DNA from: Macrostomum lignano | Taxonomy: Eukaryota | Direction of reading: 5' to 3' | Length of the DNA: 33,177 nt | Assembly (NCBI GenBank): GCA_002269645.1 | Contig: NIVC01002237.1 | Coordinates: 1-33,177 of the forward strand | Shown: positions 1,590-24,003 of the stretch, piece by piece | How positions within the stretch are numbered: the stretch's first letter is position 1 | How the letters are laid out: each line of letters opens with the position of its first letter | Notes under the pieces: model-generated | Database searches by the model: none | Told to the model about the DNA's origin: nothing | What the model saw: the letters and a program-made list of their open reading frames with translations, nothing else | Made by a program: the position numbers and the translations under genes

Positions 1590-1838
1590 GTGAGGGGTCG
1601 ATTTCTGAAAACTGAGTTTGTTAGCCAGTTTTGCAGTCTGAAAGTCACTCGGAAGCGACTGATTCAAGTTTAAAAAAAAATAATAACTTCATTTTAAATT
1701 TTAACTTCCTAGAAGTTTTTCTGCTTTTTGCTTTTCACTGTCTTAGAAATAGTCAACCTTTGTGGTTAGGTATTTCCTGGAAACGATCAATCTAATTGTT
1801 TTTAAGTTTCCTAGAAAGCTTTTTAAAGTTGAACCCTT

Positions 1839-4016: not shown

Positions 4017-4590
4017 CCTTCCTAGCACATGGCCTATTGCTCATTCAGCAGAATTTTTATAAAGCTTTATTAAAATGAGACTAAGTTTGCAAAAGATGTC
4101 CGAATATGAAGGTTTGTGAGGAGTTGTCACTCCAGGCTCTGGTTCTGGGTGTCCTTGGTTCAACCAGTCACTCGGCATATATCGAGCAGCTTCTGGAGGC
4201 CTGAGGCGAGTCTCCAGGGTAGGCCTCAGGCTCCCAACTTCATCCGTGCTGTGCTTGCATGCCGCGGCAGCACTTGGTTTCAATTGAAATTGATCTCAGC
4301 CGTCGGTTCTATTTTTATTTATCCCTCCTCCCTAACCTCCCTCCACAGCCTCGCCTCCAGTCCCCCTTACGCGCCTATTGTCCCAACTCATTATCAACAG
4401 CAGTCAATAATTCATATATTAATTAGATTTCCTGTTATGTTTCACTCAAACTATTTTTTTGCTGCGTATCTTTTCCCTGCCAACCGGGCAGTCGTCTGCT
4501 TATTATGTTTATGAGATCCATTGGGAATTTCTCATGATTAATATTTATATTTCTATAACTGCTTCCCACCTCATCACTCTCAGCACTAGT

Positions 4591-5835
4591 TCCATCCCCT
4601 GCCTACTGCCTTCCCCTCCCTTCCCTAGTGTCTACCCCACTTTATTGCCTACCTCTCCCTTCCCTACTGTCTACCCCTCCCTATTGTCTACCCCTCCCTT
4701 CCCTACTGTCTACCCCTCCCTATTGTCTATCCATCCCTTCCCTATTGTCTACTCATCCCTTCCCTACTGTCTACCCATCCCTTCCCTACTGTCTACCCAT
4801 CCCTTCCCTACTGTCTACCCATCCCTTCCCTACTGTCAACCCTTCCCTACTGTCTACCCCTCCCTATTGTCCACTCATCCCTTCCCTACTGTCTACCCAT
4901 CCCTTCCCTACTGTCTACCCATCCCTTCCCTACTGTCTACCCTTCCCTACTGTCTACCCCTCCCTATTGTCTACCCATCCCTTTCCTACTGTCTACCCAT
5001 CCCTTCCCTACTGTCTACCCTTCCCTACTGTCTACCCCTCCCTATTGTCTACCCATCCCTTTCCTACTGTCTACCCATCCCTTCCCTACTGTCTACCCTT
5101 CCCTGCTGTCTACCCTTCCCTACTGTCTACCCTTCCCTGCTGTCTACCCTTCCCTACTGTCTACCCTTCACTACTGTCTACCCCTCCCTTCCCTACCGGC
5201 TACACCAGTCTCCCTACTGTCTACCCCTCCCTTCCCTACCGGCTACACCAGTATCCCTACTGTCTACCCCTCCCTTCCCTACCGGCTACACCAGTATCCC
5301 TACTGTCTACCCCTCCCTTCCCTACCGGCTACACCAGTCTCCCTACTGTCTACCCCTCCCTTCCCTACCGGCTACACCAGTATCCCTACTGTCTACCCTT
5401 CCCTTCCCTACCGGCTACACCAGTATCCCTACTGTCTACCCCTCCCTTCCCTACCGTCTACACCAGTATCCCTACTGTCTACCCTTCCCTTCCCTACCGG
5501 CTACACCAGTATCCCTACTGTCTACCCCTCCCTTCCCTACCGGCTACGCCAGTCTCCCTACTGTCTACCCCTCCCTTCCCTACCGGCTACACCAGTATCC
5601 CTACTGTCTACCCTTCCCTTCCCTACCGGCTACACCAGTATCCCTACTGTCTACCCCTCCCTTCCCTACCGTCTACACCAGCTGTCTCCCTACTGTCTAC
5701 CCCTCCCTTCCCTACCGGCTACACCAGTATCCCTACTGTCTACCCTTCCCTTCCCTACCGGCTACACCAGTATCCCTACTGTCTACCCCTCCCTTCCCTA
5801 CCGTCTACACCAGCTGTCTCCCTACTGTCTACTCT
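4591..5835. repeat. Pyrimidine-rich compound minisatellite (CCCTACTGTCTACCC core; longer ~43-bp unit containing CCGGCTACACCAGT in the 3' part)
   Basis: Read directly; source of the 471-aa and 514-aa low-complexity ORFs. Confidence 0.93.
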
Positions 5836-7330
5836 CCTTGTCCACTGTCAACTCCCCTTCCCAGTATCAGCTGATCACTATGTCGGACAACAAAATTTGG
5901 CATCTGATACCTACACTTGCTCTAATAGCCGCTACCAACTAAAAGTACGCACTGAGAGCACTGCAAGCTTGCTGATCCCTCTCCGTGACTCGTATTTGGG
6001 AAAATTTACCCCAGCTAGTCTCAATAGGATTATTTCATCGTTCCCATATCTGGAGGCCGGCTGGATGTGTAGCCATTTTGCCCTGGCCTATTTCCACCCA
6101 AAAAGGCCCGCCAAGTGGAGATATAAATCACGCGTCCGCTGCCCTCTGCTGGTTCTGCGGCTTCCCATATAAGCTCGTAGCCTATTCGGTCGGTTCGCCC
6201 GATGCCTCTCCTCTCCCGCGGGGGGGGGGGGGAGGGCGGTTGCCGGGACCAGCAGGGTTAGGAGCGAGCGATATGCATATATTGAATAAATGCCGCCCTT
6301 GTTCACTGCCAGATGAGATAGACGGCCTTTGCTATACTAGTAGTTCCCATTTCTTCCTGGGATGCTGGAGTTATCCCAAAAATAACGGGGGCACTTTGCT
6401 CTCCCACTGCTTGTTTCCCATTTCGCCTATGGGAGAGGCAGAGGCCTGTAGAGTGGATTGAGTGCGTCAAATGAAAACTGAGTCTCTTTCACTATGCTCA
6501 AGCGAAATCTTGCGAGGCGCAACGCTTTGACATTATCTAATCATGTTAGACAAACTTTGCCCACTCACCTCTCTGTCAACTTTTTTCTGTGTGTCAACTG
6601 ATTTCCTGCACCTTCTAATCTGACTCGTCTGCTCGCATGCATAACTAATATATTTGGGATCTATAAGTGGCAATAAGGGGATTTTTCTCCCTTTTTTCCC
6701 TGTAACCCCCTCCCCCACCCTGACTGAGGAAAACATGCACTTTGGTATGGCAGGGAAATCACAGCCAGAAAGCGCACAGTTACACACACTTCACACGCAC
6801 TGCAAAGAGACTGACGGAGAAGCCGGCAAGAGACTTGTAAACACGAATTGGTGTGCCCCCCACCCATGTCTGATCTCGCTAAGAGAAAAATCAATCGATT
6901 TGTTAACCAACCTCCTCCCAACAAAGTGCCAGTTTTGCGGGCTCGAGCTGGATGATCAATCTTCAAATTTAGCTTTGACATCTTGTAAGGTTCAAAACAG
7001 ATTTATTTAGACCTAATGATCGTGGCTGCATGCTTTCAATATTTCAATATTTATGTGCTAGTTTATGCACCGCTTAATGTAGAACTTCTCGCGAGTTAAG
7101 TAACGATATGTAGCGTATTAAACTTTTTAAAGCTGAAATTTTATAGGGAAGTACAAAACCTCAATCTAAAAAGTCCAAAATGCGTGAGAGCCCTAGGTAC
7201 GCAGTGTATGTCTTCATCTTTCAGTGTGGGACTCCCATATTTACTTGATTGATTGCCCGCGAGCGAATAGTGCAGTGCTGAGTGAATGGGGGTCTAATTT
7301 CAAGCCCGAATCACGCACCCCATTGTGCAG

Positions 7331-7504
7331 GCATCAACGAGAGCGAAGTGTCCAGCCGGAAGCAGGCGTTCGGCGCCAACGTGATCCCGCCGAAGCCGCC
7401 AAAGACTTTTTTACAGCTGGCGCTCGAAGCGATGCAGGACTACACGCTGATTATGCTGATTGTCTGCGCGCTTGTGTCTCTGGGCATCTCGCTGTATCAA
7501 AAGT
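7331..7504 (+). CDS. PMCA: PMCA coding exon 2 (NVIPPKPPKTFLQL, TM1)
   Basis: Acceptor TGTGCAG|GC at 7330. Encodes GINESEVSSRKQAFGANVIPPKPPKTFLQLALEAMQDYTLIMLIVCALVSLGISLYQK. The GTGAGT donor at 7505 gives phase 1, matching exon 3. Confidence 0.92.
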
Positions 7505-7520
7505 GTGAGTGTTTGGGTCT

Positions 7521-8238
7521 GTGGGAGTGGGTTTGCCGGTTGCAGTGAGTGGGTTTGCCGGTTGCAGTGAGTGGCTTTGCCAGTTGCGGTGAGTGGCTTT
7601 GCCGGTTGCAGTGAGTGGGTTTGCCGGTTGCAGTGAGTGGGTTTGCCGGTTGCAGTGAGTGGCTTTGCCAGTTGCGGTGAGTGGCTTTGCCAGTTGCGGT
7701 GAGTGGGTTTGCCGGTTGCAGGGAGTGGGTTTGCCGGTTGCAGTGAGTGGGTTTGCCGGTTGCAGTGAGTGGGTTTGCCGGTTGCAGTGAGTGGGTTTGC
7801 CGGTTGCAGTGAGTGGGTTTGCCGGTTGCAGTGAGTGGGTTTGCCGGTTGCAGTGAGTGGGTTTGCCGGTTGCAGTGAGTGGGTTTGCCGGTTGCAGTGA
7901 GTGGGTTTGCCGGTTGCAGTGAGTGGGTTTGCCGGTTGCAGTGAGCGGATTTGCCGGTTGCAGTGAGTAAGTTTGCCGGTTGCAGTGAGTGGCTTTGCCA
8001 GTTGCGGTGAGTGGGTTTGCCGGTTGCAGGGAGTGTGGGTTTGCCGGTTGCAGTGAGTGGGTTTGCCGGTTGCAGTGAGTGGGTTTGCCGGTTGCAGTGA
8101 GTGGGTTTGCCGGTTGCAGTGAGTGGGTTTGCCGGTTGCAGTGAGTGGGTTTGCCGGTTGCAGTGAGTGGGTTTGCCGGTTGCAGTGAGTGGGTTTGCCG
8201 GTTGCAGTGAGTGGGTTTGCCGGTTGCAGTGAGTGGGT
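7521..8238. repeat. 22-bp minisatellite (GTGAGTGGGTTTGCCGGTTGCA) filling intron 2
   Basis: About 32 copies, covering about 90% of the 790-nt intron. Confidence 0.97.
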
Positions 8239-8294
8239 GGAAGTGACTGCAGGAAAGAGGACGCAGAAATCCACGCTCTCTCTCTTCCCCGCAG

Positions 8295-8681
8295 TCCGCA
8301 CTAAGACGCCCGGCGAGACTCACGGAGACGACAGCGAGGAGCAGGCCGGCTGGATCGAGGGCGTCGCCATCGCCTTCGCCGTAGTGGTCGTGGTGCTGGT
8401 GACGGCATTCAACGACTGGAGCAAGGAGCGGCAGTTCCGCGGACTGCAGGCCAAGCTCGAACAGGAGCACCTGTTCGATGTCATCCGCAATGGCCAGGTG
8501 TCCAAGGTGCTGGTCAACGATATCGTTGTCGGCGACATCTGCCAGGTGAAGTACGGCGATGCCCTGCCCGCCGACGGCATCATCATCCAGAGCAACGATC
8601 TCAAGGTAGACGAGAGCAGTCTCACTGGAGAAAGCGACCACGTGAAGAAGGGCGAGGATCGGGATCCCATTTTGATGTCTG
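8295..8681 (+). CDS. PMCA: PMCA coding exon 3 (TM2, actuator domain)
   Basis: Acceptor CTCTTCCCCGCAG|TC. Encodes ..[74 protein letters not shown], including the TGES motif. Phase-1 donor G|GTGAGC at 8682. Confidence 0.95.
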
Positions 8682-8766
8682 GTGAGCTCGAAATTCTGAC
8701 GTTTTTAACTGTTAGCAGACGCTTGGATTTAAATTTCACTTAAATCAAAGAATGGCTGAATGTCGT

Positions 8767-9267
8767 GAATGACGTACAGAATGACTGAATGACTTACAGA
8801 ATGACTGAATGACTTACAGAATGACTACATTACTTACAGAATGGCTGCATTACTTACAGAATGACTACATTACTTACAGAATGACTAAATTACTTACAGA
8901 ATGACTACATTACTTACAGAATGACTGCATTACTTACAGAATGACTACATTACTTACAGAATGACTGCATTACTTACAGAATGACTACATTACTTACAGA
9001 ATGACTGCATTACTTACAGAATGACTGCATTACTTACAGAATGACTGAATTACTTACAGAATGACTGCATTACTTACAGAATGACTGCATTACTTACAGA
9101 ATGACTACATTACTTACAGAATGACTGCATTACTTACAGAATGACTGCATTACTTACAGAATGACTGCATTACTTACAGAATGACTGCATTACTTACAGA
9201 ATGACTGCATTACTTACAGAATGACTACATTACTTACAGAATGACTGAATTACTTACAGAATGACTA
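8767..9267. repeat. 20-bp minisatellite (GAATGACTGCATTACTTACA), intron 3
   Basis: About 25 copies with variation at positions 9-10 (GC/AC/GA). Confidence 0.97.
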
Positions 9268-10759
9268 ACTAAAGAGATTACAGAGAAATTGTTACAGAAA
9301 GAGTGACAGATTGATTGCTTGTCTCCCTGTCTGATTGATTAGTCCAATAATTAATTAAATCTGATTCGTGTTACTTAGAAATCGTCTATAGAATCACAAA
9401 GTTACTTGCAAATACTCAAGTAAGCCTGAAAATTTTAGAAAATGCTTTTTACGTTCTGGCGAAGGAACTAGTAAAACTGAAGTAAGCAGACAGAAAGATT
9501 GACTGAGAGAGAGTTGAGACACATCCGGGAACTACGACTATATTGACTTTGCCATCGGCCCCGCAGAAGATTGTTTGAACAAAATCTTCTAAACTTCCCC
9601 CCCCCCCCCCAAGAAGAGACCCACTCATCGTTATCGCCGTTCGACGTTCGCTTAGAGACAGTCTTGTGTCAGCGTTCCCTCTAACCGCCCGCCGCCACCT
9701 CTGTCCAAGCTATACCCGAACTTCTCCCAAGCTGATAAAACTCTGCTGTCAGAGTCTGGAGAGAGACTGGGCAGACGTTTGAAGCATCAGAGGAAGATGC
9801 CGATGTTATAGGATGCTTACAGACTGGGTTAATCTTCCTTCCAGCTCCCCGTTCCATCCCAGAAAACCCCGCCCCCGTCTTGCCTTACCTAGCCAGCCCA
9901 TGCGGCGGCAGCTCTAATTAGGGGGAGGGGGGAGGTGCCTCCTTTTTCCTGCCAAAAGTTCTTGCCGACCTTAGTTCGTCTGCGTTCATCTCAGCTAAGC
10001 TACCTTTCCTTGGCGGTAGGCGAGCCGGTGCGCACAGCACAGCTGACCCCGCCGAGGTGGGGGGGGCGGCCACCACTTCAGCAGCTGGTCCGCGCTGCCA
10101 TCAGCCGAGCGAATCGAAGCGAGATGAAGAGGAAAGGGAAAGAAAGAAGAAAGTCAATGTGGCTGTCGTCGCCGAAGAAGAGCCACCGCCCGCCCGCCCC
10201 TCCCGCAGTTTCCCTCTCGACTTTCACCCCCCTTCCGTCTTCACCGCTGCCTGGGGGGGGGTCTGGTTTAAGGGATAGGGGGCGGAGGGGGGCGGCATCC
10301 TGGCGACAGCTCCGGCATTTTGTCAGCACTGCTGCGACTTTCGGAGAGAACAGTCTGGCTATTGGAATTTCGGAATCCACTTTGCCCTCTTTACCCAGCA
10401 GTCGATATGGGGTGAATTTTTTACGCATATCGATTCCCCTGTTTTCTTATGCGCCCTAGGCGTATGTGTAAGAATATATAGTATTTGAAACTCCTAGCAG
10501 TCTTTCTAATAATAATCTTTCATTTCGGCTGGATGTTTTGCGTATGCTGTGATGCATAAGCATTGGGTCACGGCTGCAGGCAGTTGAGGCCTAGGCTGTC
10601 TGAACTGCGAAAAATGTTTTCCCTTTTTCGATCCACGCTCGTATTGCAGGCTTTTGAATTACAATCGCAACTTTTAAGATTTCTGAGTTTCTTCATAAAA
10701 ATGCATTCTTGTACAGTTCTCAGTCGTGCTTATCAACAGCAACACAAACAAAGGCGTTA

Positions 10760-11893
10760 CTTATCAGTTTTATGACTGGCCTCCAATACAGCTCTCGTCA
10801 CCCGAAAACACTGTACCAAGGGCGCTGCTCTCTCCGCTTATCTGTTTCATGACTGTTTTATGGCCTCTAATACAGCTCTCGTCACCCGAAAACACTGTAC
10901 CAAGGGCGCTGCTCTCTCCGCTTATCTGTTTCATGACTGTTTTATGGCCTCTAATACAGCTCTCGTCACCCGAAAACACTGTACCAAGGGCGCTGCTCTC
11001 TCCGCTTATCTGTTTCATGACTGTTTTATGGCCTCTAATACAGCTCTCGTCACCCGAAAACACTGTACCAAGGGCGCTGCTCTCTCCGCTTATCTGTTTC
11101 ATGACTGTTTTATGGCCTCTAATACAGCTCTCGTCACCCGAAAACACTGTACCAAGGGCGCTGCTCTCTCCGCTTATCTGTTTCATGACTGTTTTATGGC
11201 CTCTAATACAGCTCTCGTCACCCGAAAACACTGTACCAAGGGCGCTGCTCTCTCCGCTTATCTGTTTCATGACTGTTTTATGGCCTCTAATACAGCTCTC
11301 GTCACCCGAAAACACTGTACCAAGGGCGCTGCTCTCTCCGCTTATCTGTTTCATGACTGTTTTATGGCCTCTAATACAGCTCTCGTCACCCGAAAACACT
11401 GTACCAAGGGCGCTGCTCTCTCCGCTTATCTGTTTCATGACTGTTTTATGGCCTCTAATACAGCTCTCGTCACCCGAAAACACTGTACCAAGGGCGCTGC
11501 TCTCTCCGCTTATCTGTTTCATGACTGTTTTATGGCCTCTAATACAGCTCTCGTCACCCGAAAACACTGTACCAAGGGCGCTGCTCTCTCCGCTTATCTG
11601 TTTCATGACTGTTTTATGGCCTCTAATACAGCTCTCGTCACCCGAAAACACTGACCAAGGGCGCTGCTCTCTCCGCTTATCAGTTTCATGACTGTTATAT
11701 GGCATATACAGCTCTCGTCACCCGAAAACACTGACCAAGGGCGCTGCTCTCTCCGCTTATCAGTTTCATGACTGTTATATGGCATATACAGCTCTCGTCA
11801 CCCGAAAACACTGACCAAGGGCGCTGCTCTCTCCGCTTATCAGTTTCATGACTGTTTTATGGCCTCCAATACAGCTCTCGTCAGCCGAAAACA
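10760..11893. repeat. 84-bp tandem repeat, intron 3
   Basis: About 13 copies. The central copies appear identical and the terminal copies are variants (some 83 bp). Confidence 0.97.
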
Positions 11894-12068
11894 CATCGAA
11901 ATCTGAAGTAGGGCACTAGTGGCGCAAGTTGAAGTGAAAACTGATTCAACTGAATAACTGAGGAAAGCAGTTTTCTCCAAACGTCTGAGTTATTTACAAG
12001 TGCAAATGTCAGCCTTTAGATCTCATGATATTAACGAAACTCTGTAACGCATCTTAAAAACTCTACAG

Positions 12069-12245
12069 GCACCAACGTGATGGAAGGCTCCGGCCGAATG
12101 ATAGTGACAGCTGTCGGCATCAACTCCCAGGCTGGCATCATCTTCAGCCTGCTCGGCGCCACCGGCGAGGCCGAAGGCGCTGACGGCGACGACAAGCCGG
12201 CACCGGCGCAGGCGCAGAAAAGATCCGCTAACGACAAGCCGAACG
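12069..12245 (+). CDS. PMCA: PMCA coding exon 4 (ends at splice site A region)
   Basis: Acceptor CTCTACAG|GC. Encodes [31 protein letters not shown]..., a highly conserved PMCA segment. Phase-1 donor G|GTACGC at 12246. Confidence 0.93.
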
Positions 12246-12662
12246 GTACGCAGATTAATAAATTTGACGAGCCTATTTTTGCGTATCAGAAAGCAAGTTA
12301 ACTAACGAGTGCAGCATACAAGGCGATTCGTAGAATTTATATTTCATGCATGAAGTTTAGTTCGTGACATGGGCCGCTTTCATGAGCTCGAAAAGCAACA
12401 AGCAAGACGTGTCGACGATATGAATTTTCGAGCTTATGAAACGTTCCCTTCACCTCAAGAACCCAGACTGTCATGTCCAATATCCAACCCGCTCGCACAG
12501 ACTCTGACATCTTCATCTCTCCAGTGCCTCTCTCTTGAAACTATAGCCGAGCAGCCGCAGGGGCACTCAGTAAATAACTAAGCTAAATATTAGCCAGCAA
12601 AAAGATCGCCACAAGAAAAGCAATAAAAATAAGCTTGCCCGACATTTCTGCTTCTATTCCAG

Positions 12663-12680
12663 CCGAGCAAAGTGCGCCGC
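12663..12680 (+). CDS. Candidate 18-nt alternative microexon at PMCA splice site A
   Basis: CATTTCTGCTTCTATTCCAG|CCGAGCAAAGTGCGCCGC|GTGAGT. Frame-preserving and stop-free in phase 1 (adds A-E-Q-S-A-P, and the following D becomes H). No transcript evidence. Confidence 0.5.
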
Positions 12681-13234
12681 GTGAGTAGAGCCTGGTAGGG
12701 TTGTCCGCAATCCGCCAGGCTGCCTAATCAGTCAATGATATATAGTTTTATTTTAGTTGAACATCCTTAATTAGTACGAAGGTGTAGGAAGCGGCGGCAG
12801 TTCCGCCTATTTTTATCGAGTCCCGATTGATCGCATCTTAAAAAAGGCTTGCGCTTCACTTTTTTTGCCATGCTATAACTAATCATAATCACGGGGTCGC
12901 TCCCCCCGGGGCTTTGTATAGGGAAACACTAGCCGCTACTCAATGCTATGGTTTTGACTCTTTGTGACAGGGCGGATAAGGCTGAGCGAGGCTGCATCCC
13001 AGCTGATAGGGATAAAAAGCTAATGGGGATTAAGAGGATGGATGGAGTAGAGAGAGAAGGAAAGCATGAAGCATGAAGGAAGGAAAATGAAGGAAAGCAT
13101 TTTTTAGAATTATCTAGATGTAGCTCGTAGTGAGCACTAGCTATTATTTGAGCTGGCTTTGAGTTAAAGACGCAGTAAAGTATTGAGGGGCAAGCAAAGG
13201 ACATGCCTGCAAAGAATTTGGCTAGGATAGACAA

Positions 13235-13402
13235 GCACAGACCATCAACATACAGGCACAGACCATCAGCATACAGGCACAGACCATCAACATACAGGCA
13301 CAGACCTTCAACATACAGGCACAGACCATCAACATACAGGCACAGACCGTCAGCATACAGGCACAGACCTTCAACATACAGGCACAGACCGTCAAATTAC
13401 AG
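13235..13402. repeat. 21-bp minisatellite (GCACAGACCATCAACATACAG), intron 4
   Basis: About 8 copies. Confidence 0.92.
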
Positions 13403-13409
13403 GAAAATA

Positions 13410-13972
13410 CACAGAAAAAGACACATAAACAGACACAGACACAGACACTAGCGCAGACACAGACAAAGACACAGACATGGCACAGACACAGACACAGATA
13501 CAGACATGGCACAGACACAGACACAGATACAGACATGGCACAGACACAGATACAGACATGGCACAGACACAGATACAGACATGGCACAGACACAGATACA
13601 GACATGGCACAGACACAGATACAGACATGGCACAGACACAGATACAGACATGGCACAGACACAGACACAGATACAGACATGGCACAGACACAGATACAGA
13701 CATGGCACAGACACAGATACAGACATGGCACAGACACAGATACAGACATGGCACAGACACAGACACAGATACAGACATGGCACAGACACAGACACAGATA
13801 CAGACATGGCACAGACACAGACACAGATACAGACATGGCACAGACACAGACACAGATACAGACATGGCACAGACACAGATACAGACATGGCACAGACACA
13901 GACACAGATACAGACATGGCACAGACACAGATACAGACATGGCACAGACACAGACACAGACATGGCACAGAA
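13410..13972. repeat. 23/29-bp minisatellite (GGCACAGACACAG[ACACAG]ATACAGACAT), intron 4
   Basis: Units differ by one ACACAG hexamer; source of the overlapping MAQTQ/HRHR/TDTD ORFs. Confidence 0.95.
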
Positions 13973-15173
13973 ATAACAATTCCAACATCGATCCGCAATG
14001 CTCAGAATTGGTTTCAGAGGCAGCTTATTGGCCTGTGGGCAATAAATGAGGTACCCATAGGCAATAGAATGCAGCACAGCCGAGCGGAGGCCCAGATTCC
14101 TGCCAAAGTCAAATCAAGGCAAATTACTTGAGAAGATTTTGGCCCAACTAGCAGCAGCTGATTCATTCGAGTGTGCTCGGGGATTAAGGATGGGGCAAGG
14201 CAGCAGCGGGGATTTAATCCTATTCTCGACAGCTTTGTCTGCTCTGTCGCCCCCACCCCCGGCATTGGCAGCTGAGTTGAGTAGCCAAATGAAAGGGAAA
14301 TAATGATTTTGGCGCAATATTATGCGTCGAGAATGGCCCTGACGGGATGGGAAAACGGAACAAGCTCAAGCCTTGCTGGCCGAACATTTTCCTCATGGCC
14401 TATTTGGCCAGGCAGTGGGCTAGAAATCCCATGCGAATTCTCCCCCTTGCCCCATCGCAACCTGCCAGCCCATGCGGCAGCAAAGCCTGGTTGCCCTGGA
14501 ATGAGTCGAGGGATTAATTTTCTACCGACTGCACGCACACCTTCTTCGTTGGCTCTGCCTCCTCCGTTCCCCTCTCTCTCTTCTGAATCTTTTTTCCGGC
14601 GTCTCAGGCTGAACACCCCCCCCAGCATGCAGTTTTTGTTATCCCTTAATTCTGATGCCGAATTAATTACCGATCCGCTGGCTAAAAATATCCCCACACG
14701 GGAATTTGCCCCCCTCCCGGACATAAGTTTGTCTGCTCTTCAACTAACGCCTCGAACACATGCAGCTCACCCCCCTTCCCTGTGCTCAATATTAGTTCTC
14801 AGCTCAGGTCTGACTGAGGCGCGGCTAAATCTCCAACTAGAATAATTATATTGTTGAAGCGTGAAACATCTTTGTGTTTTCTCCAACTAAAACAGCAGTA
14901 AAGCTACTTAAAGTAGCTTGTTATTCTTGCTGTGTATTATTTACAATTCGATTTAAATGATTTCTAGACGTGAATTAGCAGTGGACACAGAGAAATTTAC
15001 AACACTATATCGATTTGAAGTGTACTGAGTGATCTTCTGAAAATTTTAATGCTTATTGCACGAGCTCTGTTGCCAATGCGTTTTGGTATATTTTTGTTCC
15101 GCCATTTCCTAGCAAACTGTGCCTTCGAATATATGTTTGAAGTGTTTGCTCATCAGTTTATTTATAAAGCAAT

Positions 15174-15512
15174 CTGTCCCAGGTGCTGACACAGTTACCT
15201 GTCACAGGTGCTGACACAGTTACCTGTCCCAGGTGCTGACACAGTTACCTGTCCCAGGTGCTGACACAGTTACCTGTCCCAGGTGCTGACACAGTTACCT
15301 GTCCCAGGTGCTGACACAGTTACCTGTCCCAGGTGCTGACACAGTTACCTGTCCCAGGTGCTGACACAGTTACCTGTCCCAGGTGCTGACACAGTTACCT
15401 GTCCCAGGTGCTGACACAGTTACCTGTCCCAGGTGCTGACACAGTTACCTGTCCCAGGTGCTGACACAGTTACCTGTCCCAGGTGCTGACACAGTTACCT
15501 GTCCCAGGTGCT
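15174..15512. repeat. 25-bp minisatellite (GTCCCAGGTGCTGACACAGTTACCT), intron 4
   Basis: About 13.5 near-perfect copies, ending about 30 nt before the exon 5 acceptor. Confidence 0.97.
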
Positions 15513-15541
15513 TACAACTCGCCAATCCCTGCCCACGGCAG

Positions 15542-16075
15542 ATCCCGAAGCTGTACAGCTGACTGCTGTGAGCGGCGCCGCCGGTTCCTCGCCAGCCGGG
15601 GGCGACGGCGCCACCAATCACGTGGACGACGAAGAGAAGAAGAAGAAGTACTCGTCAAGCAAGGAGAAGAGCATCCTGCAGGCCAAGCTCACCAGCTTGG
15701 CCATCCGGATAGGCAACGTCGGCTCGCTGATCGGCGCTGTGACCTTCCTTGTCCTCATCATCAAGTACTGCGTGCTAACCTTCGCCCAGCCGCCAACCGG
15801 AGCCGGCCTGGAGTTTAACTTCACCCGCGACCTGCAGAAGTTTATCGACTTCGTCATCATCTCCGTCACCGTGATCGTGGTCGCCGTGCCCGAAGGCTTG
15901 CCGCTGGCTGTCACCCTCTCTCTGGCTTACTCAGTCAAGAAGATGATGAAGGACAACAACTTGGTGCGGCATCTGGACGCCTGCGAGACCATGGGCAATG
16001 CTACAGCAATCTGTTCAGACAAGACTGGCACTTTGACTACTAACAGGATGACTGCCGTTCAGGTGTACCTGGGAG
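15542..16075 (+). CDS. PMCA: PMCA coding exon 5 (TM3, TM4, phosphorylation site)
   Basis: Acceptor CCCACGGCAG|AT. Encodes [77 protein letters not shown], with PEGL and DKTGT motifs. Phase-1 donor G|GTGAGT at 16076. Confidence 0.96.
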
Positions 16076-16154
16076 GTGAGTGGCTGAAATTCACTCGACA
16101 AAGCCACCAAATTCACTCCCTTATCCCCTCGCCTTAATCTCTTAACCCCTTGAG

Positions 16155-16458
16155 AATCCCTTGTCCGAAATCCGCTGTCCAAAATCCCCTGTCTTAAATC
16201 CCATGTCCGAAATCCCGTCCGAAATCCCCTGTCCGAAATCCCCTGTCCGAAATCCCCTGTCTGAAATCCCCTGTCTTAAATCCCCTGTCTTAAATCCCAT
16301 GTCCGAAATCCCCTGTCCGAAATCCCCTGTCCGAAATCCCCTGTCCGAAATCCCCTGTCCGAAATCCCCTGTCCGAAATCCCCTGTCCGAAATCCCCTGT
16401 CCGAAATCCCCTGTCCGAAATCCCCTGTCCGAAGTCCCTGTCCGAAATCCCCTGTCCT
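16155..16458. repeat. 14-bp minisatellite (AAATCCCCTGTCCG), intron 5
   Basis: About 21 copies. Confidence 0.95.
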
Positions 16459-16648
16459 CTTTCCAGAATCACCTTGAAAACGTCAAATACTACGAGCTAA
16501 AATTCCACACTTCAACTCTCCTTAAGTTTTTACCGCATGAAAAAAAAAATTTTGCTTCCAAAATAAGAATCGAACCTGGGACTCATCGAATCAAAGCAAC
16601 AAAGATCGCCTGAATTACTCGAACTCGTTAATCATAATTCCACCGCAG

Positions 16649-16758
16649 GGGCCCTGGAGAAGAAGATTACCAAGAAGTACAGCGACTATCCCAAAGAGAT
16701 TAGCGAAATGCTTTGCAAAGCAATTTCAGTTAATAGCGGCTACACGTCGCGGATTTTG
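16649..16758 (+). CDS. PMCA: PMCA coding exon 6 (short, absent from the ORF track)
   Basis: Acceptor CACCGCAG|GG. Encodes GALEKKITKKYSDYPKEISEMLCKAISVNSGYTSRIL, matching PMCA ISINSAYTSKIL. Donor TTG|GTGAGC at 16759. The 110-nt length converts phase 1 to phase 0, as exon 7 requires. Confidence 0.9.
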
Positions 16759-17290
16759 GTGAGCCAATGTTCTGTTCATTTTCTTATTCCTCAAATTTGA
16801 CGATGCGGTCGGAATCAATTTTATTCCCAATTTTCTCTTTTTCCAAAGCGCTGCCTTTGTGGGCGATTGGCTGGGATTAGCAGGCTAAGACGGCCTCGAG
16901 GCAGACTGCTTGTTTAAGCTTTGAGCTTTTGTGTCGAAACCTGCAGTTCCTTCATCATTTCAGGTCTACCTGTAGCTTTAGCGAGAGTCATTGCACTGTG
17001 CGGAATTCTCTTTTTGAGCTAGATTAAGTCACAGTCGCTTGAGTCACAACTACTACTAAGAATCAATCCTACGGCTCGTAACTGATGATGCCCTGAAGCA
17101 ACCATGAACAATTCCTAGAAGGAACCTCAACAATGTCGAGCCAATCTTAACAATGTCATGAAGCGCCTCTAAAAATATCTCAAAAAATTGGGAAACGTCA
17201 CTTAAACTACATCCAGTATCATGATTTCAATGTACATTGCCTATATTGAACATCAACAAAATGTACATTATATTGAACATCAATGTACAG

Positions 17291-17746
17291 CCCGCCGAGG
17301 TGGCCAACGAGCTGCCCAAGCAAGTGGGCAACAAGACCGAATGCGCCCTGCTGGGCCTGGTGCTGGACCTCGGCAAGCACTATGACGACTACAGACGCGA
17401 GGTACCCGAGGAGGCCATCCACAAGATCTACACCTTCAACTCGGTGCGCAAGTCCATGACCACGGTGATCAATAGGCCCGGCGGCGGCTACATCCTGTTC
17501 TGCAAAGGCGCCTCCGAGATGGTCATGAGCAAGTGCGCGTTCATCCTGGACGGCCAGGGCCAGCCAAGGCCGTTCGGCAAGCCGGAGCAGGAGCAAATCG
17601 TCCGCCAGGTGATCGAGCCGATGGCCTGCGACGGTCTGCGTACGATTGGCATCGCTTTCAAGGAGTTCGTGCCGCGCGGCTCCGGCCAGCTGGGGCCCAA
17701 CGAGGTGCCTTTGGACGGCGAACCGGACTGGGACAATGAGGATCAG
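17291..17746 (+). CDS. PMCA: PMCA coding exon 7 (nucleotide-binding domain)
   Basis: Acceptor TGTACAG|CCC. Encodes QVGNKTECALLG..YTFNSVRKSMTTVI..CKGASEM..MACDGLRTI. Donor CAG|GTGAGT at 17747. Confidence 0.96.
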
Positions 17747-17819
17747 GTGAGTCACTTTTGGTGAATGAAAGAGATTGAGTGTTTAATTTGTAATGCCGTA
17801 CACTCTAAAGAGGTAGGCT

Positions 17820-18181
17820 GTTGTTTAGTAATTGGCGGCATGCAGACTTCAAATGGAGTGAGCGTGTTTGTTTTGTAAGACGGCAGACTTCAAAGGGAGT
17901 GAGCGTGTTTGTTTAGTAAGACGGCAGACTTCAAAGGGAGTGAGCGTGTTTGTTTAGTAAGACGGCAGACTTCAAAGGGAGTGAGCGTGTTTGTTTAGTA
18001 AGTCAGCAGACTTCAAAGGGAATAAGCGTGTTTGTTTAGTAAGTCGGCAGACTTCAAAGGGAATAAGCGTGTTTGTTTAGTAAGTCGGCAGACTTCAAAG
18101 GAAGTGACTTTGTTTGTTTAGTAAGTCGGCAGACTTCAAAGGAAGTGACTTTGTTTGTTTAGTAAGGTGGCAGGCTTCAAA
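17820..18181. repeat. 41-bp minisatellite (AGACTTCAAAGGGAGTGAGCGTGTTTGTTTAGTAAGACGGC), intron 7
   Basis: About 8-9 copies whose sequence drifts progressively along the array. Confidence 0.95.
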
Positions 18182-18256
18182 GAGATGCCGAGTGGCAAAT
18201 TCAGTCAGTTTTAAAAGCGTCCGCTTATCAATGGCTACTCATCCCGAAAACACCAG

Positions 18257-18499
18257 GTGGTGTCAAGGCTGACCTGCATCGGGGTCATCGGTATTGAGGA
18301 CCCGGTGCGGCCAGAGGTGCCCGCCGCTATTCGCAAATGCCAGAACGCCGGCATCTGCGTCCGCATGGTGACGGGAGACAACATCAACACGGCCCGGTCC
18401 ATCGCCACCAAGTGTGGCATTCTGAAACCGGGCGAAAATTTCCTTGTGCTGGAGGGCAAGGACTTCAACAAGCGAATTCGCGACCCCAACACTGGACAG
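18257..18499 (+). CDS. PMCA: PMCA coding exon 8
   Basis: Acceptor CACCAG|GTG. Encodes [52 protein letters not shown]. Donor CAG|GTGAGA at 18500. Confidence 0.96.
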
Positions 18500-19157
18500 G
18501 TGAGAATAGCCGGTAGATTCCTCGCTTGTTATTGGGATGAATGCAGAGCTTATTCAGTCCTCAAATCCGAAGCATTCTACCTAAAGGGTATGGACAATTC
18601 TCAGTTAGAAGGAAAAGGAAGCGTTTTTCCATTTTTAGAATTAAAAAATAGACATATGGATCGTTGTAAATCTAAAAAGCATGTGTTCTGTCTTAGGCGT
18701 TACTACGTGGGGCCCTTGAAAGAAACGAGGAAGCTGTTTCCGCGGTTTGTGGACTGGTCGCTTAGCCTGTTTGAGTCAGACCTTAAAGTAACACCTGTCC
18801 CCGGCACCTGGTACGCAAAGATACACTTCCTGGATAACCCGTACCCATGCAACAAGGCTAAGTGAAAAGTCAAGTCCAGCAATCCTAGGACTACCGGACT
18901 GCCTTGAAAACATGCGGTACGCAAATCCCTTGGATCGGCTTGTGAGTCAGCTTGGAGAAGGTTCCCCAGCCATTCCTGCATCAGAATAGAGGGGTTGCCG
19001 GTGTGTAGCATCGCAGATCTTAGCTCATGAGTCTGGCTGACAAGTTTGCGCGAGATGAATTCCCTTGACGCGGTCAACCAACGACCACTGAGCGAAATGC
19101 GTTACAGTGCCTAACGGCTAAAAATGAAAACATTATAATCACCTTCAACCTGCGCAG

Positions 19158-19544
19158 GTGACCCAGGACCGATTTGATCAGGTGTGGCCTCGGCTCCGCG
19201 TCCTTGCCCGCTCCTCGCCGCAGGACAAGTACACCCTAGTCTCCGGCATCATCGCCTCGAAGATTTCCGCCGGTCGCGAGGTTGTCGCCGTCACCGGCGA
19301 CGGCACCAACGACGGGCCGGCTTTGAAGAAAGCGGACGTCGGCTTTGCCATGGGCATCCAGGGTACTGACGTAGCCAAGGAGGCCTCCGACATCATTCTG
19401 ACTGACGACAACTTCTCCAGCATTGTCAAGGCCGTTATGTGGGGCCGCAACGTGTATGACTCGATCTCCAAGTTCCTGCAGTTCCAGCTAACTGTCAACG
19501 TTGTCGCTGTGGTTGTGGCCGTCTTCAGCGCCTGCGTCATCTCG
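19158..19544 (+). CDS. PMCA: PMCA coding exon 9 (hinge motif, TM5)
   Basis: Acceptor CTGCGCAG|GTG. Encodes [53 protein letters not shown]. Donor TCG|GTAGGG at 19545. Confidence 0.96.
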
Positions 19545-19590
19545 GTAGGGTTGAGATGCTCTGACATTGGGTACTGAGGTTGGGTATGGA

Positions 19591-19953
19591 TTTTTTTTTA
19601 GAGGCAGGGTCTGACAGGGACCCTGGCGCACTTTAAGCGACATTGTCACACAACCGGCGAGAGGCATTACTGCCCATTCTGCCGACTCCCCTGAGCAGGC
19701 ACACAAGCGCGCGGATACGTACGCAGTCACACGCACAGGCACACACTCATACAGGAGTGTACAGCGGCCCTAACTTTATTTATCGTTAGGCATTCACAGT
19801 GCCTTGGGGGTTGGCCCTCAAGGGCGTTGATTGCATGAGTAGAGCCAAGCCGAGGTTCCAATTTAGCTACAAATTAATGTGACTGCACTGGGAATCGAGC
19901 CTGGGCCGCTGGCACATAAGAGCGCCGCGCTAGACCACTGGGCTACGGCCCCC
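19591..19953 (-). mobile_element. tRNA-derived SINE-like element in intron 9
   Basis: The - strand head (19880-19953) reads GGGGCCGTAGCCCAGTGGTCTAGCGCGGCGCTCTTATGTGCCAGCGGCCCAGGCTCGATTCCCAG. It has an A-box-like TAGCCCAGTGG, a B-box-like GGCTCGATTCC, and its 3' half resembles tRNA-Glu. The D-arm does not pair, so it is not a functional tRNA. An A9 run at 19591-19599 is the possible tail, but the 3' boundary is uncertain. Confidence 0.55.
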
Positions 19954-20166
19954 TATAGGTGTGGATTCACTTTTTTATAACCTTAATGCTGTTACATGTA
20001 GATTTTTTTGTAACCCATGACAGGTTTCTTGAGTAAATTCGTTTCATTTTTATAGTAGATTCGAGTGTAGATTGGTGCATTTGAGTAGATTCGATGCACA
20101 CGTACTTACTTACATTGAGTGATCGTATGATCCGTACATTGACAAGTACATTGCCCGTCAAAACAG

Positions 20167-20380
20167 GACACGCCGCTGCGAGCCATCCAGATGCTGTGGG
20201 TGAACCTCATCATGGACACGCTGGCCTCTCTGGCCCTGGCAACTGAGCTGCCTAGCGACGAGCTGCTTGAGAGAAAGCCCTACGGCCGGACCAAGCCGCT
20301 GATTGACACCACCATGCTGAGGAATATTGTGGGCAATGCGCTTTACCAGCTGGTTATCACCTTCTTCCTGCTGTTCTGCG
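20167..20380 (+). CDS. PMCA: PMCA coding exon 10 (TM6-TM7)
   Basis: Acceptor AAACAG|GAC. Encodes [41 protein letters not shown]. Phase-1 donor G|GTAGGG at 20381. Confidence 0.95.
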
Positions 20381-20487
20381 GTAGGGAACCAACTTTTCTA
20401 TTGTAATTGCATGGAGTAGCCTATTGAGTAGTCAGACTAGTCATAACCTACTGTGCTACAATGACCTAATCCAATACCTATCTCTAG

Positions 20488-20690
20488 GCGACAAGATGAT
20501 TGACACGCCCATCGAGATTGGCAGCCGGGTCCCCACCGAGCACTTTACCGCTATATTTAACGCCTTCGTGCTGATGACTCTGTTCAACGAAATCAACGCC
20601 AGGAAGATTCACAACCAGCGGAACATCTTCTCGGGCCTGCAGCGCAACCTGCTGTTTGTGCTCATCTGGATCACCACCTTCGTTCTCCAG
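20488..20690 (+). CDS. PMCA: PMCA coding exon 11 (TM8-TM9)
   Basis: Acceptor TCTCTAG|GC. Encodes PTEHFTAIFNAFVLMTLFNEINARKIHNQRNIFSGL. Donor CAG|GTTAGT at 20691. Confidence 0.95.
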
Positions 20691-20865
20691 GTTAGTCAGT
20701 TTGCAGGGCCCATTGGGGCGCTGCCGCAAATCAAAGACTCGCAACCCGAGGGGAGGCGAGTAGTCACGCTCACACAGGGTGTACAGCGGCCCCGACTGTC
20801 TCATCGTTATTGAGTTTATTGAACCTTATTGAGTTATAAAAAGTGATCTTAATAAATTTCTGCAG

Positions 20866-20973
20866 ATTCTGATTGTCCAGTACGGCGGCATGGTGTTCAG
20901 AACGCGCGGTCTGGAGCTGAGCCACTGGCTCTGGTGCCTCTGCTTCGGTTTTGGCACCCTCGTCTGGCACCAG
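20866..20973 (+). CDS. PMCA: PMCA coding exon 12 (TM10)
   Basis: Acceptor TTTCTGCAG|ATT. Encodes ILIVQYGGMVFRTRGLELSHWLWCLCFGFGTLVWHQ. Donor CAG|GTGAGA at 20974. Confidence 0.94.
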
Positions 20974-21006
20974 GTGAGAGAGAATGCAAACTTTTTCCGA
21001 TTCTTA

Positions 21007-21209
21007 GTTACCTGGATGGGATTCTGTCAGCTGACACAAGTTACCTGGATGGGATTCTGTCAGCTGACACAAGTTACCTGGATGGGATTCTGTCAGCTGA
21101 CACAAGTTACCTGGATGGGATTCTGTCAGCTGACACAAGTTACCTGGATGGGGTTCTGTCAGCTGACACAAGTTACCTGGATGGGGTTCTGTCAGCTGAC
21201 ACAAGTTAC
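21007..21209. repeat. 33-bp minisatellite, left part (GTTACCTGGATGGG[A/G]TTCTGTCAGCTGACACAA)
   Basis: 6 full units plus GTTAC, then interrupted by the LINE tail. Confidence 0.97.
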
Positions 21210-23916: not shown

Positions 23917-24003
23917 TGCCGCTAAAGTATTTATAGAGATCTATAGAAAGTTGCACAAATGAAACAATGATTTCTATTCATCCCAAACGCGCCATTGCCG
24001 CAG

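What the first reader, a model, noticed from the sequence alone, without database searches (positions are those of the whole stretch)
12663..12680. Unannotated-looking 18-nt microexon exactly at PMCA splice site A
Seen: pyrimidine-rich acceptor with nearby TGC (TTGCCCGACATTTCTGCTTCTATTCCAG), 18 nt, then GTGAGT. It is frame-preserving and stop-free in the phase-1 junction (..KPN-AEQSAPH-PEAVQ.. instead of ..KPN-D-PEAVQ..). Established: vertebrate ATP2B genes use short cassette exons at site A in the first cytosolic loop, and neural microexons regulated by Srrm3/4-type eMIC proteins have UGC motifs near the 3' splice site. Inference: this may be an invertebrate site-A microexon, possibly neural.
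Basis: partly seen in the sequence, partly recalled or inferred. Interest (0 to 1): 0.7.

Follow-up and report, generated by a model that had tools for sequence, protein, structure and literature searches.

The report
Annotated flatworm PMCA site-A microexon
The 18-base stretch is a real coding microexon of a calcium-pump (PMCA) gene of the flatworm Macrostomum lignano. It is already part of the deposited gene model, and it has counterparts in brachiopods and molluscs at the spot where vertebrate pumps are alternatively spliced; a nerve-specific role is untested.

Summary
Window 12663-12680 is ...ttctgcttctattccag|CCGAGCAAAGTGCGCCGC|gtgagt, it keeps the frame, and it turns KPN-D-PEAVQ into KPN-AEQSAPH-PEAVQ. 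A strict version of the pattern is expected 0.012 times in this intron.

It is not unannotated. The window is a whole GenBank contig of Macrostomum lignano (assembly Mlig_3_7). Its deposited protein PAA59731.1 can only be encoded if 12663-12680 is exon 5. That annotation was built from RNA-seq and kept only dominant isoforms.

The same exon is in the models of two sister loci. A paralogue (79% identical) has a homologous 18-nt exon of the same phase (GEQKTP), followed by a 27-nt exon (LLNPDAKRP) used in one of two models. Lingula has the same layout (21 nt, then 27 nt, phase 1). Bivalve and nemertean proteins carry the motif.

A fish ATP2B1-like gene has its 39-nt site-A cassette between phase-1 introns at the equivalent place, so "site A" holds.

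Skipped forms exist only in older, lower-quality gene models, so cassette behaviour is likely but not proven.

The neural, eMIC-regulated idea has no support. UGC also lies near 38% of the ordinary acceptors in these genes.

A conserved 9-nt microexon at splice site C (33122-33130) was seen in passing.

The parts
1433..31556 (+). PMCA (P-type 2B Ca2+-ATPase) gene of Macrostomum lignano, locus BOX15_Mlig031076g1. It has 15 coding exons as deposited. The true last exon probably lies beyond the end of the contig.
   Evidence: An exact splice map of the deposited protein P0241 on the window. Pfam domains Cation_ATPase_N, E1-E2_ATPase, Cation_ATPase, Hydrolase and Cation_ATPase_C. The best solved relatives are human PMCA1 (6a69) and PMCA2 (9gsd).
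12069..12245 (+). Exon 4 (177 nt), encoding GTNVMEGSG...[15 protein letters not shown]...KRSANDKPN. It ends in phase 1 (..AAC G|gtacgc).
12246..12662 (+). Intron of 417 nt between exon 4 and the microexon.
   Evidence: It is 98.1-98.6% identical to the same intron in sister loci L004 and L005.
12635..12662 (+). 3' splice region TTGCCCGACATTTCTGCTTCTATTCCAG. It has a pyrimidine tract (13 of 15), TGC at -27 and -14, and an AG-exclusion zone of 27 nt.
12663..12680 (+). The 18-nt coding microexon (exon 5 of the deposited model), CC GAG CAA AGT GCG CCG C, phase 1 in and phase 1 out. It replaces Asp with Ala-Glu-Gln-Ser-Ala-Pro-His.
   Evidence: It is identical in L004 (11722-11739) and L005 (11016-11033). 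Its homologue in paralogue B is GT GAA CAG AAG ACG CCG C.
12681..12686 (+). Consensus 5' splice site GTGAGT.
12681..15541 (+). Intron of 2861 nt between the microexon and exon 6. It holds minisatellites at 13231-13971 and 15174-15516. I found no counterpart of the 27-nt second microexon of paralogue B in it.
15542..16075 (+). Exon 6 (534 nt). It starts AT CCC GAA GCT (D/H-PEAVQLT...) and contains the basic [18 protein letters not shown] stretch, TM3, TM4 and the phosphorylation motif CSDKTGT.

Best explanation
Window 12663-12680 is a genuine, translated 18-nt exon of a plasma-membrane Ca2+-ATPase gene of the flatworm Macrostomum lignano.

Shown:
- It is spliced in between exon 4 and exon 6 through a pyrimidine-rich acceptor and a consensus GTGAGT donor.
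- Both flanking introns are phase 1. Inclusion therefore keeps the frame, adds six residues (AEQSAP) and changes the junction codon from GAT (Asp) to CAT (His).
- The insert lies in the low-complexity linker between the end of the actuator-domain segment (GIIFSLLGA) and the basic stretch that precedes TM3. This is the region called splice site A in vertebrate PMCAs.
- It is the flatworm copy of an old spiralian site-A module: a first microexon of 18-36 nt ending in Pro, then a second of about 27 nt that begins (Leu/Val)-Leu. This gene copy has kept only the first.

Inferred:
- In whole animals the inclusion form is the main mRNA.
- The exon can probably also be skipped, as its counterpart is in Lingula and as site-A cassettes are in insects and vertebrates.
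- Its effect is probably a small change in the length and composition of the linker next to the lipid-binding stretch that precedes TM3. In vertebrates this region influences membrane targeting and regulation of the pump.
For: - Identity. The window is the complete 33177-nt contig that carries PAA59731.1 (P0241) of M. lignano assembly GCA_002269645.1. P0241 reads KPNAEQSAPHPEAVQ. My exact splice mapper reproduces the whole protein only with an exon at 12663-12680.
- RNA basis. That annotation was made from RNA: STAR plus StringTie, BLAT-mapped Trinity transcripts, TACO with isoform-frac 0.75, and TransDecoder (PMC5730564).
- Sister loci. L004 and L005 carry the identical exon in their models.
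- Paralogue B (79% identical protein). It has ctgcag|GTGAACAGAAGACGCCGC|gtgagt, with the same length and phase and 11 of 18 bases identical. GAG/GAA and CAA/CAG are synonymous changes, and the peptide is GEQKTP(H). The introns around it cannot be aligned.
- Second microexon. Paralogue B also has a 27-nt exon (LLNPDAKRP), used in model P0249 and skipped in P0123, although the DNA is present in both loci.
- Lingula anatina. The genomic layout is a phase-1 exon end, then 21 nt (GAPHNVP), then 27 nt ((L/V)LSGDDQKS), then a phase-1 exon start. Models exist with and without the 21-nt exon.
- Other spiralians. The same ..P|LLSxD.. motif appears, with clean presence or absence, in bivalves, a gastropod, a nemertean and a cestode.
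- Vertebrate comparison. A fish ATP2B1-like gene has its 39-nt site-A cassette between phase-1 introns.
- Chance. The expected count of the strict pattern is 0.012 per intron.
Against: - No RNA-seq reads could be examined here. Expression is inferred from RNA-derived gene models and from conservation.
- Skipping in this gene is seen only in three UniProt models of the older ML2 assembly (P0121, P0245, P0246). These models show other oddities: read-through into the site-C intron and extra exons that look spurious. I could not check how they were built, because that paper is not held.
- All three RNA-based models of this gene group include the exon, so it may be constitutive.
- Sequence similarity to the vertebrate site-A cassette itself is absent. 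Only position and phase agree.
- The functional effect is extrapolated from vertebrate PMCA2 work cited in PMC5641333, where the strong targeting effects need inserts of more than 30 residues, not 6.
Confidence: 0.6

Rival explanations
1. The exon is real and conserved, but in this gene it is constitutive. It is always spliced in, and the skipped forms in databases are gene-prediction errors, since short exons are easily missed.
For: - All three RNA-derived GenBank models of this gene group include it.
- Both splice sites are strong.
- The skipped models come from an older annotation that also reads through the site-C intron (P0121 ends VRCCSITVMCLYLPLI) and adds odd exons (P0246).
Against: - The same older annotation did include the 18-nt exon in paralogue B (P0125), so it could detect such exons.
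- The homologous exon is present or absent between two Lingula models.
- The neighbouring 27-nt exon is used in only one of two nearly identical paralogue-B loci.
- Site A is alternatively spliced in insect models (a 36-nt cassette EAKKQRKKKSLT present or absent) and in vertebrates.
- The GenBank set was filtered at isoform-frac 0.75, so minor isoforms would not appear.
Confidence: 0.32
2. The exon is a neuron-specific microexon, switched on by an Srrm234-type eMIC splicing factor through the UGC motif near its 3' splice site and skipped elsewhere.
For: - UGC lies 14 nt before the exon.
- All four microexons seen in this gene family have UGC within 22 nt of the acceptor, against 15 of 39 longer exons (p = 0.03). 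Three of the four have ..tgcag, against 4 of 39 (p = 0.01).
- The copy in paralogue B has an AG-exclusion zone of 44 nt and an ACUAAC branch-point-like motif.
- These traits are reported for eMIC-dependent exons in flies and mammals (PMC8797185).
Against: - The sample is four exons, two of them homologous, and UGC is common at ordinary acceptors here (38%).
- The window exon has a short AG-exclusion zone (27 nt), a strong rather than weak 3' splice site, and no CUAAY motif.
- The inclusion form is the dominant isoform in models based on whole-worm RNA at three loci. That argues against inclusion limited to a minority cell type, unless the gene itself is neuron-enriched.
- PMCA is not mentioned among eMIC targets in PMC8797185.
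- I did not check whether M. lignano has an eMIC-bearing Srrm234.
Confidence: 0.06
3. The stretch is a chance pseudo-exon, or an artefact of transcript alignment that was carried into the annotation.
For: Frame-keeping AG..GT stretches are common in introns: there are 87 in the downstream intron under loose criteria.
Against: - The strict pattern is expected 0.012 times per intron and is otherwise seen in the window only at another real microexon.
- The 18 nt must be present in transcripts for the model to contain AEQSAPH.
- An exon of the same length and phase, with the motif xEQxxP, is kept in a paralogue whose introns are otherwise unalignable.
- Lingula has the same layout.
Confidence: 0.02

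Closest known systems
Vertebrate PMCA (ATP2B1-4) splice site A cassette exons: 39 nt in ATP2B1, 33+60+42 nt in ATP2B2, 42 nt in ATP2B3, 36 nt in ATP2B4 (the sizes other than the 39-nt exon are from my own knowledge)
   Same: - It lies in the same linker of the first cytosolic loop, between the GIIF.LLGA segment and the basic KKEKS.LQ.KL stretch before TM3.
- It is a frame-keeping cassette.
- Both flanking introns are phase 1, as shown here for a fish 39-nt exon (gatag|AC AAG ... AAA G|gtacgt).
- More than one small exon can sit in this intron.
- The human PMCA2 insert at residues 303-347 is confirmed by PMC5641333.
   Different: - There is no recognisable sequence similarity between AEQSAP and the basic vertebrate cassettes (NKKQDG..ENRKK).
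- The exon is 18 nt rather than 33-60 nt.
- Exon-by-exon orthology with vertebrates is not shown.
- The vertebrate targeting effects need inserts of more than 30 residues.
Site-A microexon pair of other spiralians, present in public gene models and cDNAs but, as far as I could find, not described as such
   Same: - Lingula anatina has 21 nt (GAPHNVP) then 27 nt ((L/V)LSGDDQKS), both phase 1.
- M. lignano paralogue B has 18 nt (GEQKTP) then 27 nt (LLNPDAKRP).
- Bivalves show ..GAGPTQP|LLSDPGRV|D-TEAINLE.. against ..NA-V-LSDPGRV...
- The Tridacna cDNA has the first exon without the second (..GPNEP-Y-TEAINLE), the same configuration as the window gene (AEQSAP-H-PEAVQLT).
- The start of the next exon is alignable: [14 protein letters not shown] and TEAINLE.
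   Different: - The window gene has kept only the first microexon. I found no counterpart of the 27-nt exon in its intron.
- Paralogue C has neither exon in its model.
- The first exon varies in length (18-36 nt), and only its C-terminal Pro and the phase are constant.
Insect PMCA site-A cassette (36 nt, EAKKQRKKKSLT)
   Same: It is present or absent between NCBI isoforms of the same species (Tribolium, Agrilus, Anabrus) in the same linker.
   Different: It is a basic, vertebrate-like peptide that lies closer to the GIIF.LLGA segment. I did not examine its exon structure.
Srrm3/4 (eMIC)-dependent neural microexons
   Same: The length is at most 27 nt, the exon keeps the frame and inserts into a surface loop, and UGC and a UCU-rich tract lie upstream of the 3' splice site (PMC8797185).
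   Different: Neural restriction and Srrm dependence are untested. UGC does not discriminate in this genome context. This copy lacks a long AG-exclusion zone and a strong branch point. Inclusion appears dominant in whole-animal RNA models.

Membership tests
Plasma-membrane Ca2+-ATPase (P-type 2B) | P-type ATPase domain set and closest similarity to PMCAs rather than to SERCA, SPCA or the Na,K-ATPase | tested here: met
   Pfam finds Cation_ATPase_N, E1-E2_ATPase, Cation_ATPase, Hydrolase and Cation_ATPase_C. The best PDB matches are human PMCA1 (6a69, 1390 bits) and PMCA2 (9gsd); SERCA and the Na,K-ATPase score about 260-280 bits.
Plasma-membrane Ca2+-ATPase (P-type 2B) | C-terminal calmodulin-binding region (..GQ.LW.RGL.R.QTQ..) interrupted by splice site C | tested here: met
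   Exon 24004-24195 ends KKGQVLWIRGLARLQTQ|gtaaga. The sister-locus model continues MQT-VRVVNAFRMGLD.
PMCA splice-site-A cassette exon | Lies in the first cytosolic loop between the A-domain segment and the basic lipid-binding stretch before TM3 | tested here: met
   GIIFSLLGA, then 27 aa, then the microexon, then 43 aa, then [10 protein letters not shown]. It aligns opposite human PMCA1 residues 316-321, inside the human site-A exon, but with low alignment confidence.
PMCA splice-site-A cassette exon | Frame-keeping exon with the same intron phase as the vertebrate cassette | tested here: met
   It is 18 nt and phase 1 on both sides. The fish 39-nt cassette is also phase 1 on both sides.
PMCA splice-site-A cassette exon | Both inclusion and skipping mRNAs exist in the organism | tested here: inconclusive
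   Inclusion is found in three RNA-derived GenBank models. Skipping is found only in three older UniProt models of uncertain quality. No reads were available.
PMCA splice-site-A cassette exon | Sequence homology to a vertebrate site-A exon | tested here: not met
   AEQSAP shows no similarity to NKKQDGSVENRKK. Homology is shown only to spiralian counterparts.
eMIC (Srrm3/4/234)-dependent neural microexon | Length of 3-27 nt, frame-keeping | tested here: met
   18 nt.
eMIC (Srrm3/4/234)-dependent neural microexon | UGC close to the 3' splice site, above background | tested here: inconclusive
   UGC is at -14. It lies within 22 nt at 15 of 39 ordinary acceptors against 4 of 4 microexons (p = 0.03; tiny sample, not independent).
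eMIC (Srrm3/4/234)-dependent neural microexon | Long AG-exclusion zone, strong CUAAY branch point and weak 3' splice site (the fly and mammal signature described in PMC8797185) | tested here: not met
   The AG-exclusion zone is 27 nt, 13 of 15 bases in the tract are pyrimidines, and there is no CUAAY within 60 nt. The copy in paralogue B does show these traits.
eMIC (Srrm3/4/234)-dependent neural microexon | Neuron-restricted inclusion and dependence on the splicing factor | not testable with these tools
   No tissue or single-cell RNA data and no perturbation data are available. Indirect evidence points the other way: the inclusion form passes a dominant-isoform filter on whole-worm RNA.

The most novel reading that the evidence does not exclude
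The 18-nt exon is the flatworm remnant of an ancient, alternatively spliced two-microexon module at PMCA site A. The module predates the split of flatworms, brachiopods, molluscs and nemerteans. Because it shares position and intron phase with the vertebrate and insect cassettes, it may go back to the bilaterian ancestor. Joining the two exons writes a junction-encoded Pro-Leu-Leu motif, which becomes Val-Leu when the first exon is skipped. That motif could act as a regulated sorting or interaction signal, possibly under a tissue-specific splicing programme that recognises UGCAG.
Probability: 0.15. Interest if true: 0.6.

Novelty: already known. Interest (0 to 1): 0.25.

Why it matters
For the scan, the call is a true positive on biology: a real microexon at site A. 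It is a false positive on novelty, because the exon is exon 5 of the deposited model BOX15_Mlig031076g1.

The wider point has modest interest. PMCA site A is known as a splicing hot spot in vertebrates, where it steers apical or basolateral targeting. The comparisons made here show a phase-1 microexon pair with a recognisable motif (..P|LL.x.D..) kept from flatworm to brachiopod and molluscs. The mollusc PMCA papers I could read treat this region as a fixed 'insert' rather than as cassette exons.

That makes the age and function of site-A splicing testable in tractable invertebrates. M. lignano has RNAi and transgenesis. This would add to, not overturn, what is known.

Tried and rejected
1. 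First protein search with a 244-aa fragment. It returned no close relatives because the tool appears to drop proteins much longer than the query. Repeating it with the full 1120-aa model found the species at once.
2. Nucleotide alignment of the exon 4 to exon 6 introns between paralogue groups A, B and C. Only the coding exons align, so there is no help from conserved intronic elements. The homology of the 18-nt exons rests on length, phase, order and peptide.
3. Search for a counterpart of the 27-nt exon in the window intron and for any microexon in the paralogue-C intron. Nothing convincing was found.
4. Exact splice mapping of the fish and Lingula models failed. P0239's first exons are not on its scaffold. 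I used tblastn plus direct reading instead.
5. The 52-aa Logan member of the protein cluster (P0247) is unrelated to the gene.
6. The paper describing the older ML2 annotation could not be read, so the weight of the skipped models stays uncertain.
7. Literature searches for PMCA plus microexon, and for eMIC plus flatworm, found nothing on this exon.
8. The cluster listings already showed no further M. lignano or Macrostomum transcripts in the collection.
9. I did not look for an eMIC-bearing Srrm234 in M. lignano, because I had no reliable query sequence.

Full report
**1. The observation**

The region reads ...TTGCCCGACATTTCTGCTTCTATTCCAG | CCGAGCAAAGTGCGCCGC | GTGAGT, with the exon at 12663-12680. 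The upstream exon ends at 12245 in phase 1 (AAC G|gtacgc). The downstream exon begins at 15542 (cag|AT CCC GAA). Skipping gives ..KPN-D-PEAVQ.. and inclusion gives ..KPN-AEQSAPH-PEAVQ...

To test chance I used a strict pattern: at least 11 of 15 pyrimidines, AG, 6-30 nt that keep the frame and are stop-free in phase 1, then GTRAGT. On the + strand of the whole window this pattern occurs only here and at 33122-33130. It does not occur on the minus strand or in any other intron. It is expected 0.012 times in this intron under a second-order Markov model. Loose criteria give dozens of candidates. The signal therefore lies in the strength of the two splice sites, not in the open frame.

**2. What the locus is**

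I built an exon model by hand from reading frames and a recalled human PMCA1 probe. I then searched the full-length protein.
- The best hit is a Macrostomum lignano calcium-transporting ATPase at 99% identity. Three paralogue groups are visible: A is this gene, B is 79% identical and C is 77%.
- The cluster listing shows that PAA59731.1 (P0241, BOX15_Mlig031076g1) sits on a contig of exactly 33177 nt in assembly GCA_002269645.1. The window is therefore that whole contig.
- Pfam domains and the PDB matches to human PMCA1 and PMCA2 confirm a P-type 2B pump.

**3. The exon is already annotated, and the annotation comes from RNA**

P0241 reads ..KPNAEQSAPHPEAVQ... An exact splice mapper reproduces all 1197 residues with 15 exons, and the fifth is 12663-12680.

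The Mlig_3_7 annotation was made from RNA-seq: STAR and StringTie, BLAT-mapped Trinity transcripts, merging with TACO at isoform-frac 0.75, and ORF calling with TransDecoder. Only transcripts with identical CDS were removed before deposition (PMC5730564). The 18 nt are therefore in assembled transcripts, and the inclusion form is the dominant one in whole-worm RNA.

Two sister loci from the recent genome duplication, L004 and L005, carry the identical exon in their models. Their flanking introns are 94-98.6% identical to the window.

**4. Paralogues**

In paralogue B (L001, L002) the models contain ...catttcctttccacccatctgcag|GTGAACAGAAGACGCCGC|gtgagt.
- It is also 18 nt and phase 1 on both sides, with 11 of 18 bases identical to the window exon.
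- GAG/GAA and CAA/CAG are synonymous differences, and the peptide is GEQKTP(H) against AEQSAP(H).
- The surrounding introns and the adjoining linker do not align. The exon is therefore better kept than its surroundings.

Paralogue B also has a second exon of 27 nt, atgcag|TTCTGAATCCGGATGCCAAGAGACCTG|gtaggt (LLNPDAKRP). It is used in P0249 (L002) and skipped in P0123 (L001), although L001 carries the same exon and near-identical flanks.

Paralogue C has no microexon in its model, and I found none in its intron. I also found no 27-nt counterpart in the window intron.

**5. Beyond flatworms**

I extracted the linker from 130 PMCA proteins. This shows a recurring spiralian pattern.
- Lingula: ..DGDQ[GAPHNVP]LLSGDDQKS-D-VEANASTGNSH against ..DGDQ-V-LSGDDQKS...
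- Venerid clams..QNA[GTKGAGPTQP]LLSDPGRV-D-TEAINLE.. against ..QNA-V-LSDPGRV... These two proteins are 88% identical, so they come from different species.
- Tridacna cDNA: ..GSGPNEP-Y-TEAINLE.., with the first exon in and the second out, as in the window gene.
- Gigantopelta ..GQTEPLLSNDADAKVD.., Lineus ..GQSVPLLSSEVDTKPD.., and the cestode Schistocephalus ..QVTTPLLPSPPDHRAD...

On Lingula genomic DNA (L009) I read the exons directly. The upstream exon ends ..CAA G|gt. The first microexon is ccccag|GAGCACCTCATAACGTACCAT|gtaagt (21 nt). The second is ccccag|TATTGTCTGGTGATGATCAAAAAAGCG|gtgggt (27 nt). The next exon starts acag|AC GTA GAA.

The order, the phase and the 27-nt size match M. lignano paralogue B. 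The start of the following exon is also alignable ([21 protein letters not shown]). The window exon is thus the first member of an old spiralian pair.

**6. Is it 'site A'?**

A fish ATP2B1-like locus (L006) shows the vertebrate arrangement. The upstream exon ends ..CGA AAA A|gt. The 39-nt cassette is gatag|AC AAG AAA CAG ... AAA AAA G|gtacgt (NKKQDGSVENRKK). The next exon starts gcag|CT AAA GCA CAG GAT (AKAQDGAAMEMQPL). Phase 1 is found on both sides, as in the flatworm.

The phmmer alignment to human PMCA1 places AEQSAP opposite AIENRN, inside the human site-A exon, but with low posterior probability. PMC5641333 confirms that the human PMCA2 w insert is residues 303-347 at this place. Insect NCBI isoforms differ by a 36-nt cassette here.

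Position and phase therefore support 'site A'. Sequence homology to the vertebrate cassette is not seen.

**7. Cassette or constitutive?**

Skipped forms of this gene (KPNDPEAVQ) occur in three UniProt entries from the older ML2 assembly (P0121, P0245, P0246).
- These entries show other defects, and I could not read how they were made.
- However, the same set does include the 18-nt exon in paralogue B (P0125).

The other lines of evidence are the Lingula pair of models, the variable use of the 27-nt exon, and the filter that hides minor isoforms in the GenBank set. Weighing all of this, I put regulated or partial skipping at about 0.6 and a strictly constitutive exon at about 0.3.

**8. The neural, eMIC idea**

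PMC8797185 lists the fly and mammal signature: UGC near the 3' splice site, long AG-exclusion zones, UCUC-rich tracts and strong CUAAY branch points. It does not mention PMCA.

In the three paralogue groups, UGC lies within 22 nt of 15 of 39 ordinary acceptors and of all four microexons (p = 0.03). The form tgcag occurs at 4 of 39 ordinary acceptors and at 3 of 4 microexons (p = 0.01). This is suggestive, but the sample is tiny and partly non-independent.

The window exon itself has a 27-nt AG-exclusion zone, a strong acceptor and no CUAAY motif. Inclusion dominates in models based on whole-worm RNA. I rate this reading at about 0.06.

**9. Mechanism**

Shown:
- The exon is a symmetric phase-1 exon with strong splice sites.
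- It adds six residues and changes one junction residue in a low-complexity linker.

Inferred:
- It tunes the length or composition of the segment that leads into the basic stretch preceding TM3. In vertebrate PMCA2 the insert size in this region affects membrane targeting.
- A six-residue change is small, so a subtle effect, or none, is plausible.

**10. Verdict**

The exon is real, conserved and correctly placed at site A, but it is already annotated. The neural regulation is unsupported. The cross-phylum microexon pair is the only mildly new element.

Noticed in passing
window 33122-33130 (+); also L004 30130-30138, L001 33622-33630, L002 31902-31910, L003 15938-15946: A 9-nt microexon at PMCA splice site C: cttgcag|ATGCAAACG|gtaagt (Met-Gln-Thr, phase 0). 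It lies after the exon ending ..LARLQTQ. It is in the deposited models of the sister locus (P0242 and P0244: LQTQ-MQT-VRVVNAF) and in a Logan transcript of an unidentified animal (P0127, SRR14039982). The same 9 nt with AG and GT flanks are present, but unused in the models, in paralogues B and C. In the window it lies 47 nt from the contig end and is not part of the deposited model.
   Followed up: partly
window 31323-31556 (+): The deposited protein P0241 ends in an unusual terminal exon (RRRADELRSIDPWMV...KKDN) instead of the conserved VRVVNAFRMGLD tail. In the sister locus L004 the true last exon lies 4.2 kb beyond the 9-nt exon, which here would be past the end of the contig. This C-terminus is therefore probably an artefact of the truncated contig.
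   Followed up: partly
L002 16164-16190 and L001 about 16750-16776: A 27-nt second site-A microexon in paralogue B (LLNPDAKRP, atgcag|...|gtaggt). It is included in one homeologous model (P0249) and skipped in the other (P0123), and it matches in size and phase a 27-nt exon of Lingula (L009 28011-28037). When it follows the 18-nt exon, the junction codon becomes Leu, giving Pro-Leu-Leu.
   Followed up: partly
window 21305-23551 (-), inside intron 20974-24003: A 748-aa ORF with reverse transcriptase and RNase H domains (Pfam RVT_1 4e-27, RNase_H 2e-10), so a retrotransposon. It sits in the middle of a 33-nt tandem array that continues on both sides (21006-21209 and 23755-23916), so it appears to have inserted into the array.
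   Followed up: partly
window 413-828, 1837-2657, 3596-4010, 4595-5832, 7525-8238, 8775-9266, 10777-11894, 13231-13971, 15174-15516, 16155-16457, 17842-18182, 24477-24966, 30107-30888: The 5' flank (413-828) and many introns of the gene carry long, well-kept minisatellites with periods of 14-129 nt and up to 58 copies. Several create long spurious ORFs in both strands.
   Followed up: no
L003 5730-5746 (end of exon 4 of paralogue C): Paralogue C has no separate site-A microexon, but its exon 4 ends ..RGEAAN and is followed by A-AETVKLT. This loosely resembles GEQKTP-H-AENIQLS of paralogue B. It could reflect loss of the intron before the microexon, or it could be coincidence.
   Followed up: no
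proteins P0147, P0167, P0171, P0193, P0205, P0221, P0224 against their sister isoforms: Insect NCBI isoforms differ by a clean 12-residue block, EAKKQRKKKSLT (36 nt), in the site-A linker. Site-A cassette splicing is therefore already visible in arthropod annotations.
   Followed up: no
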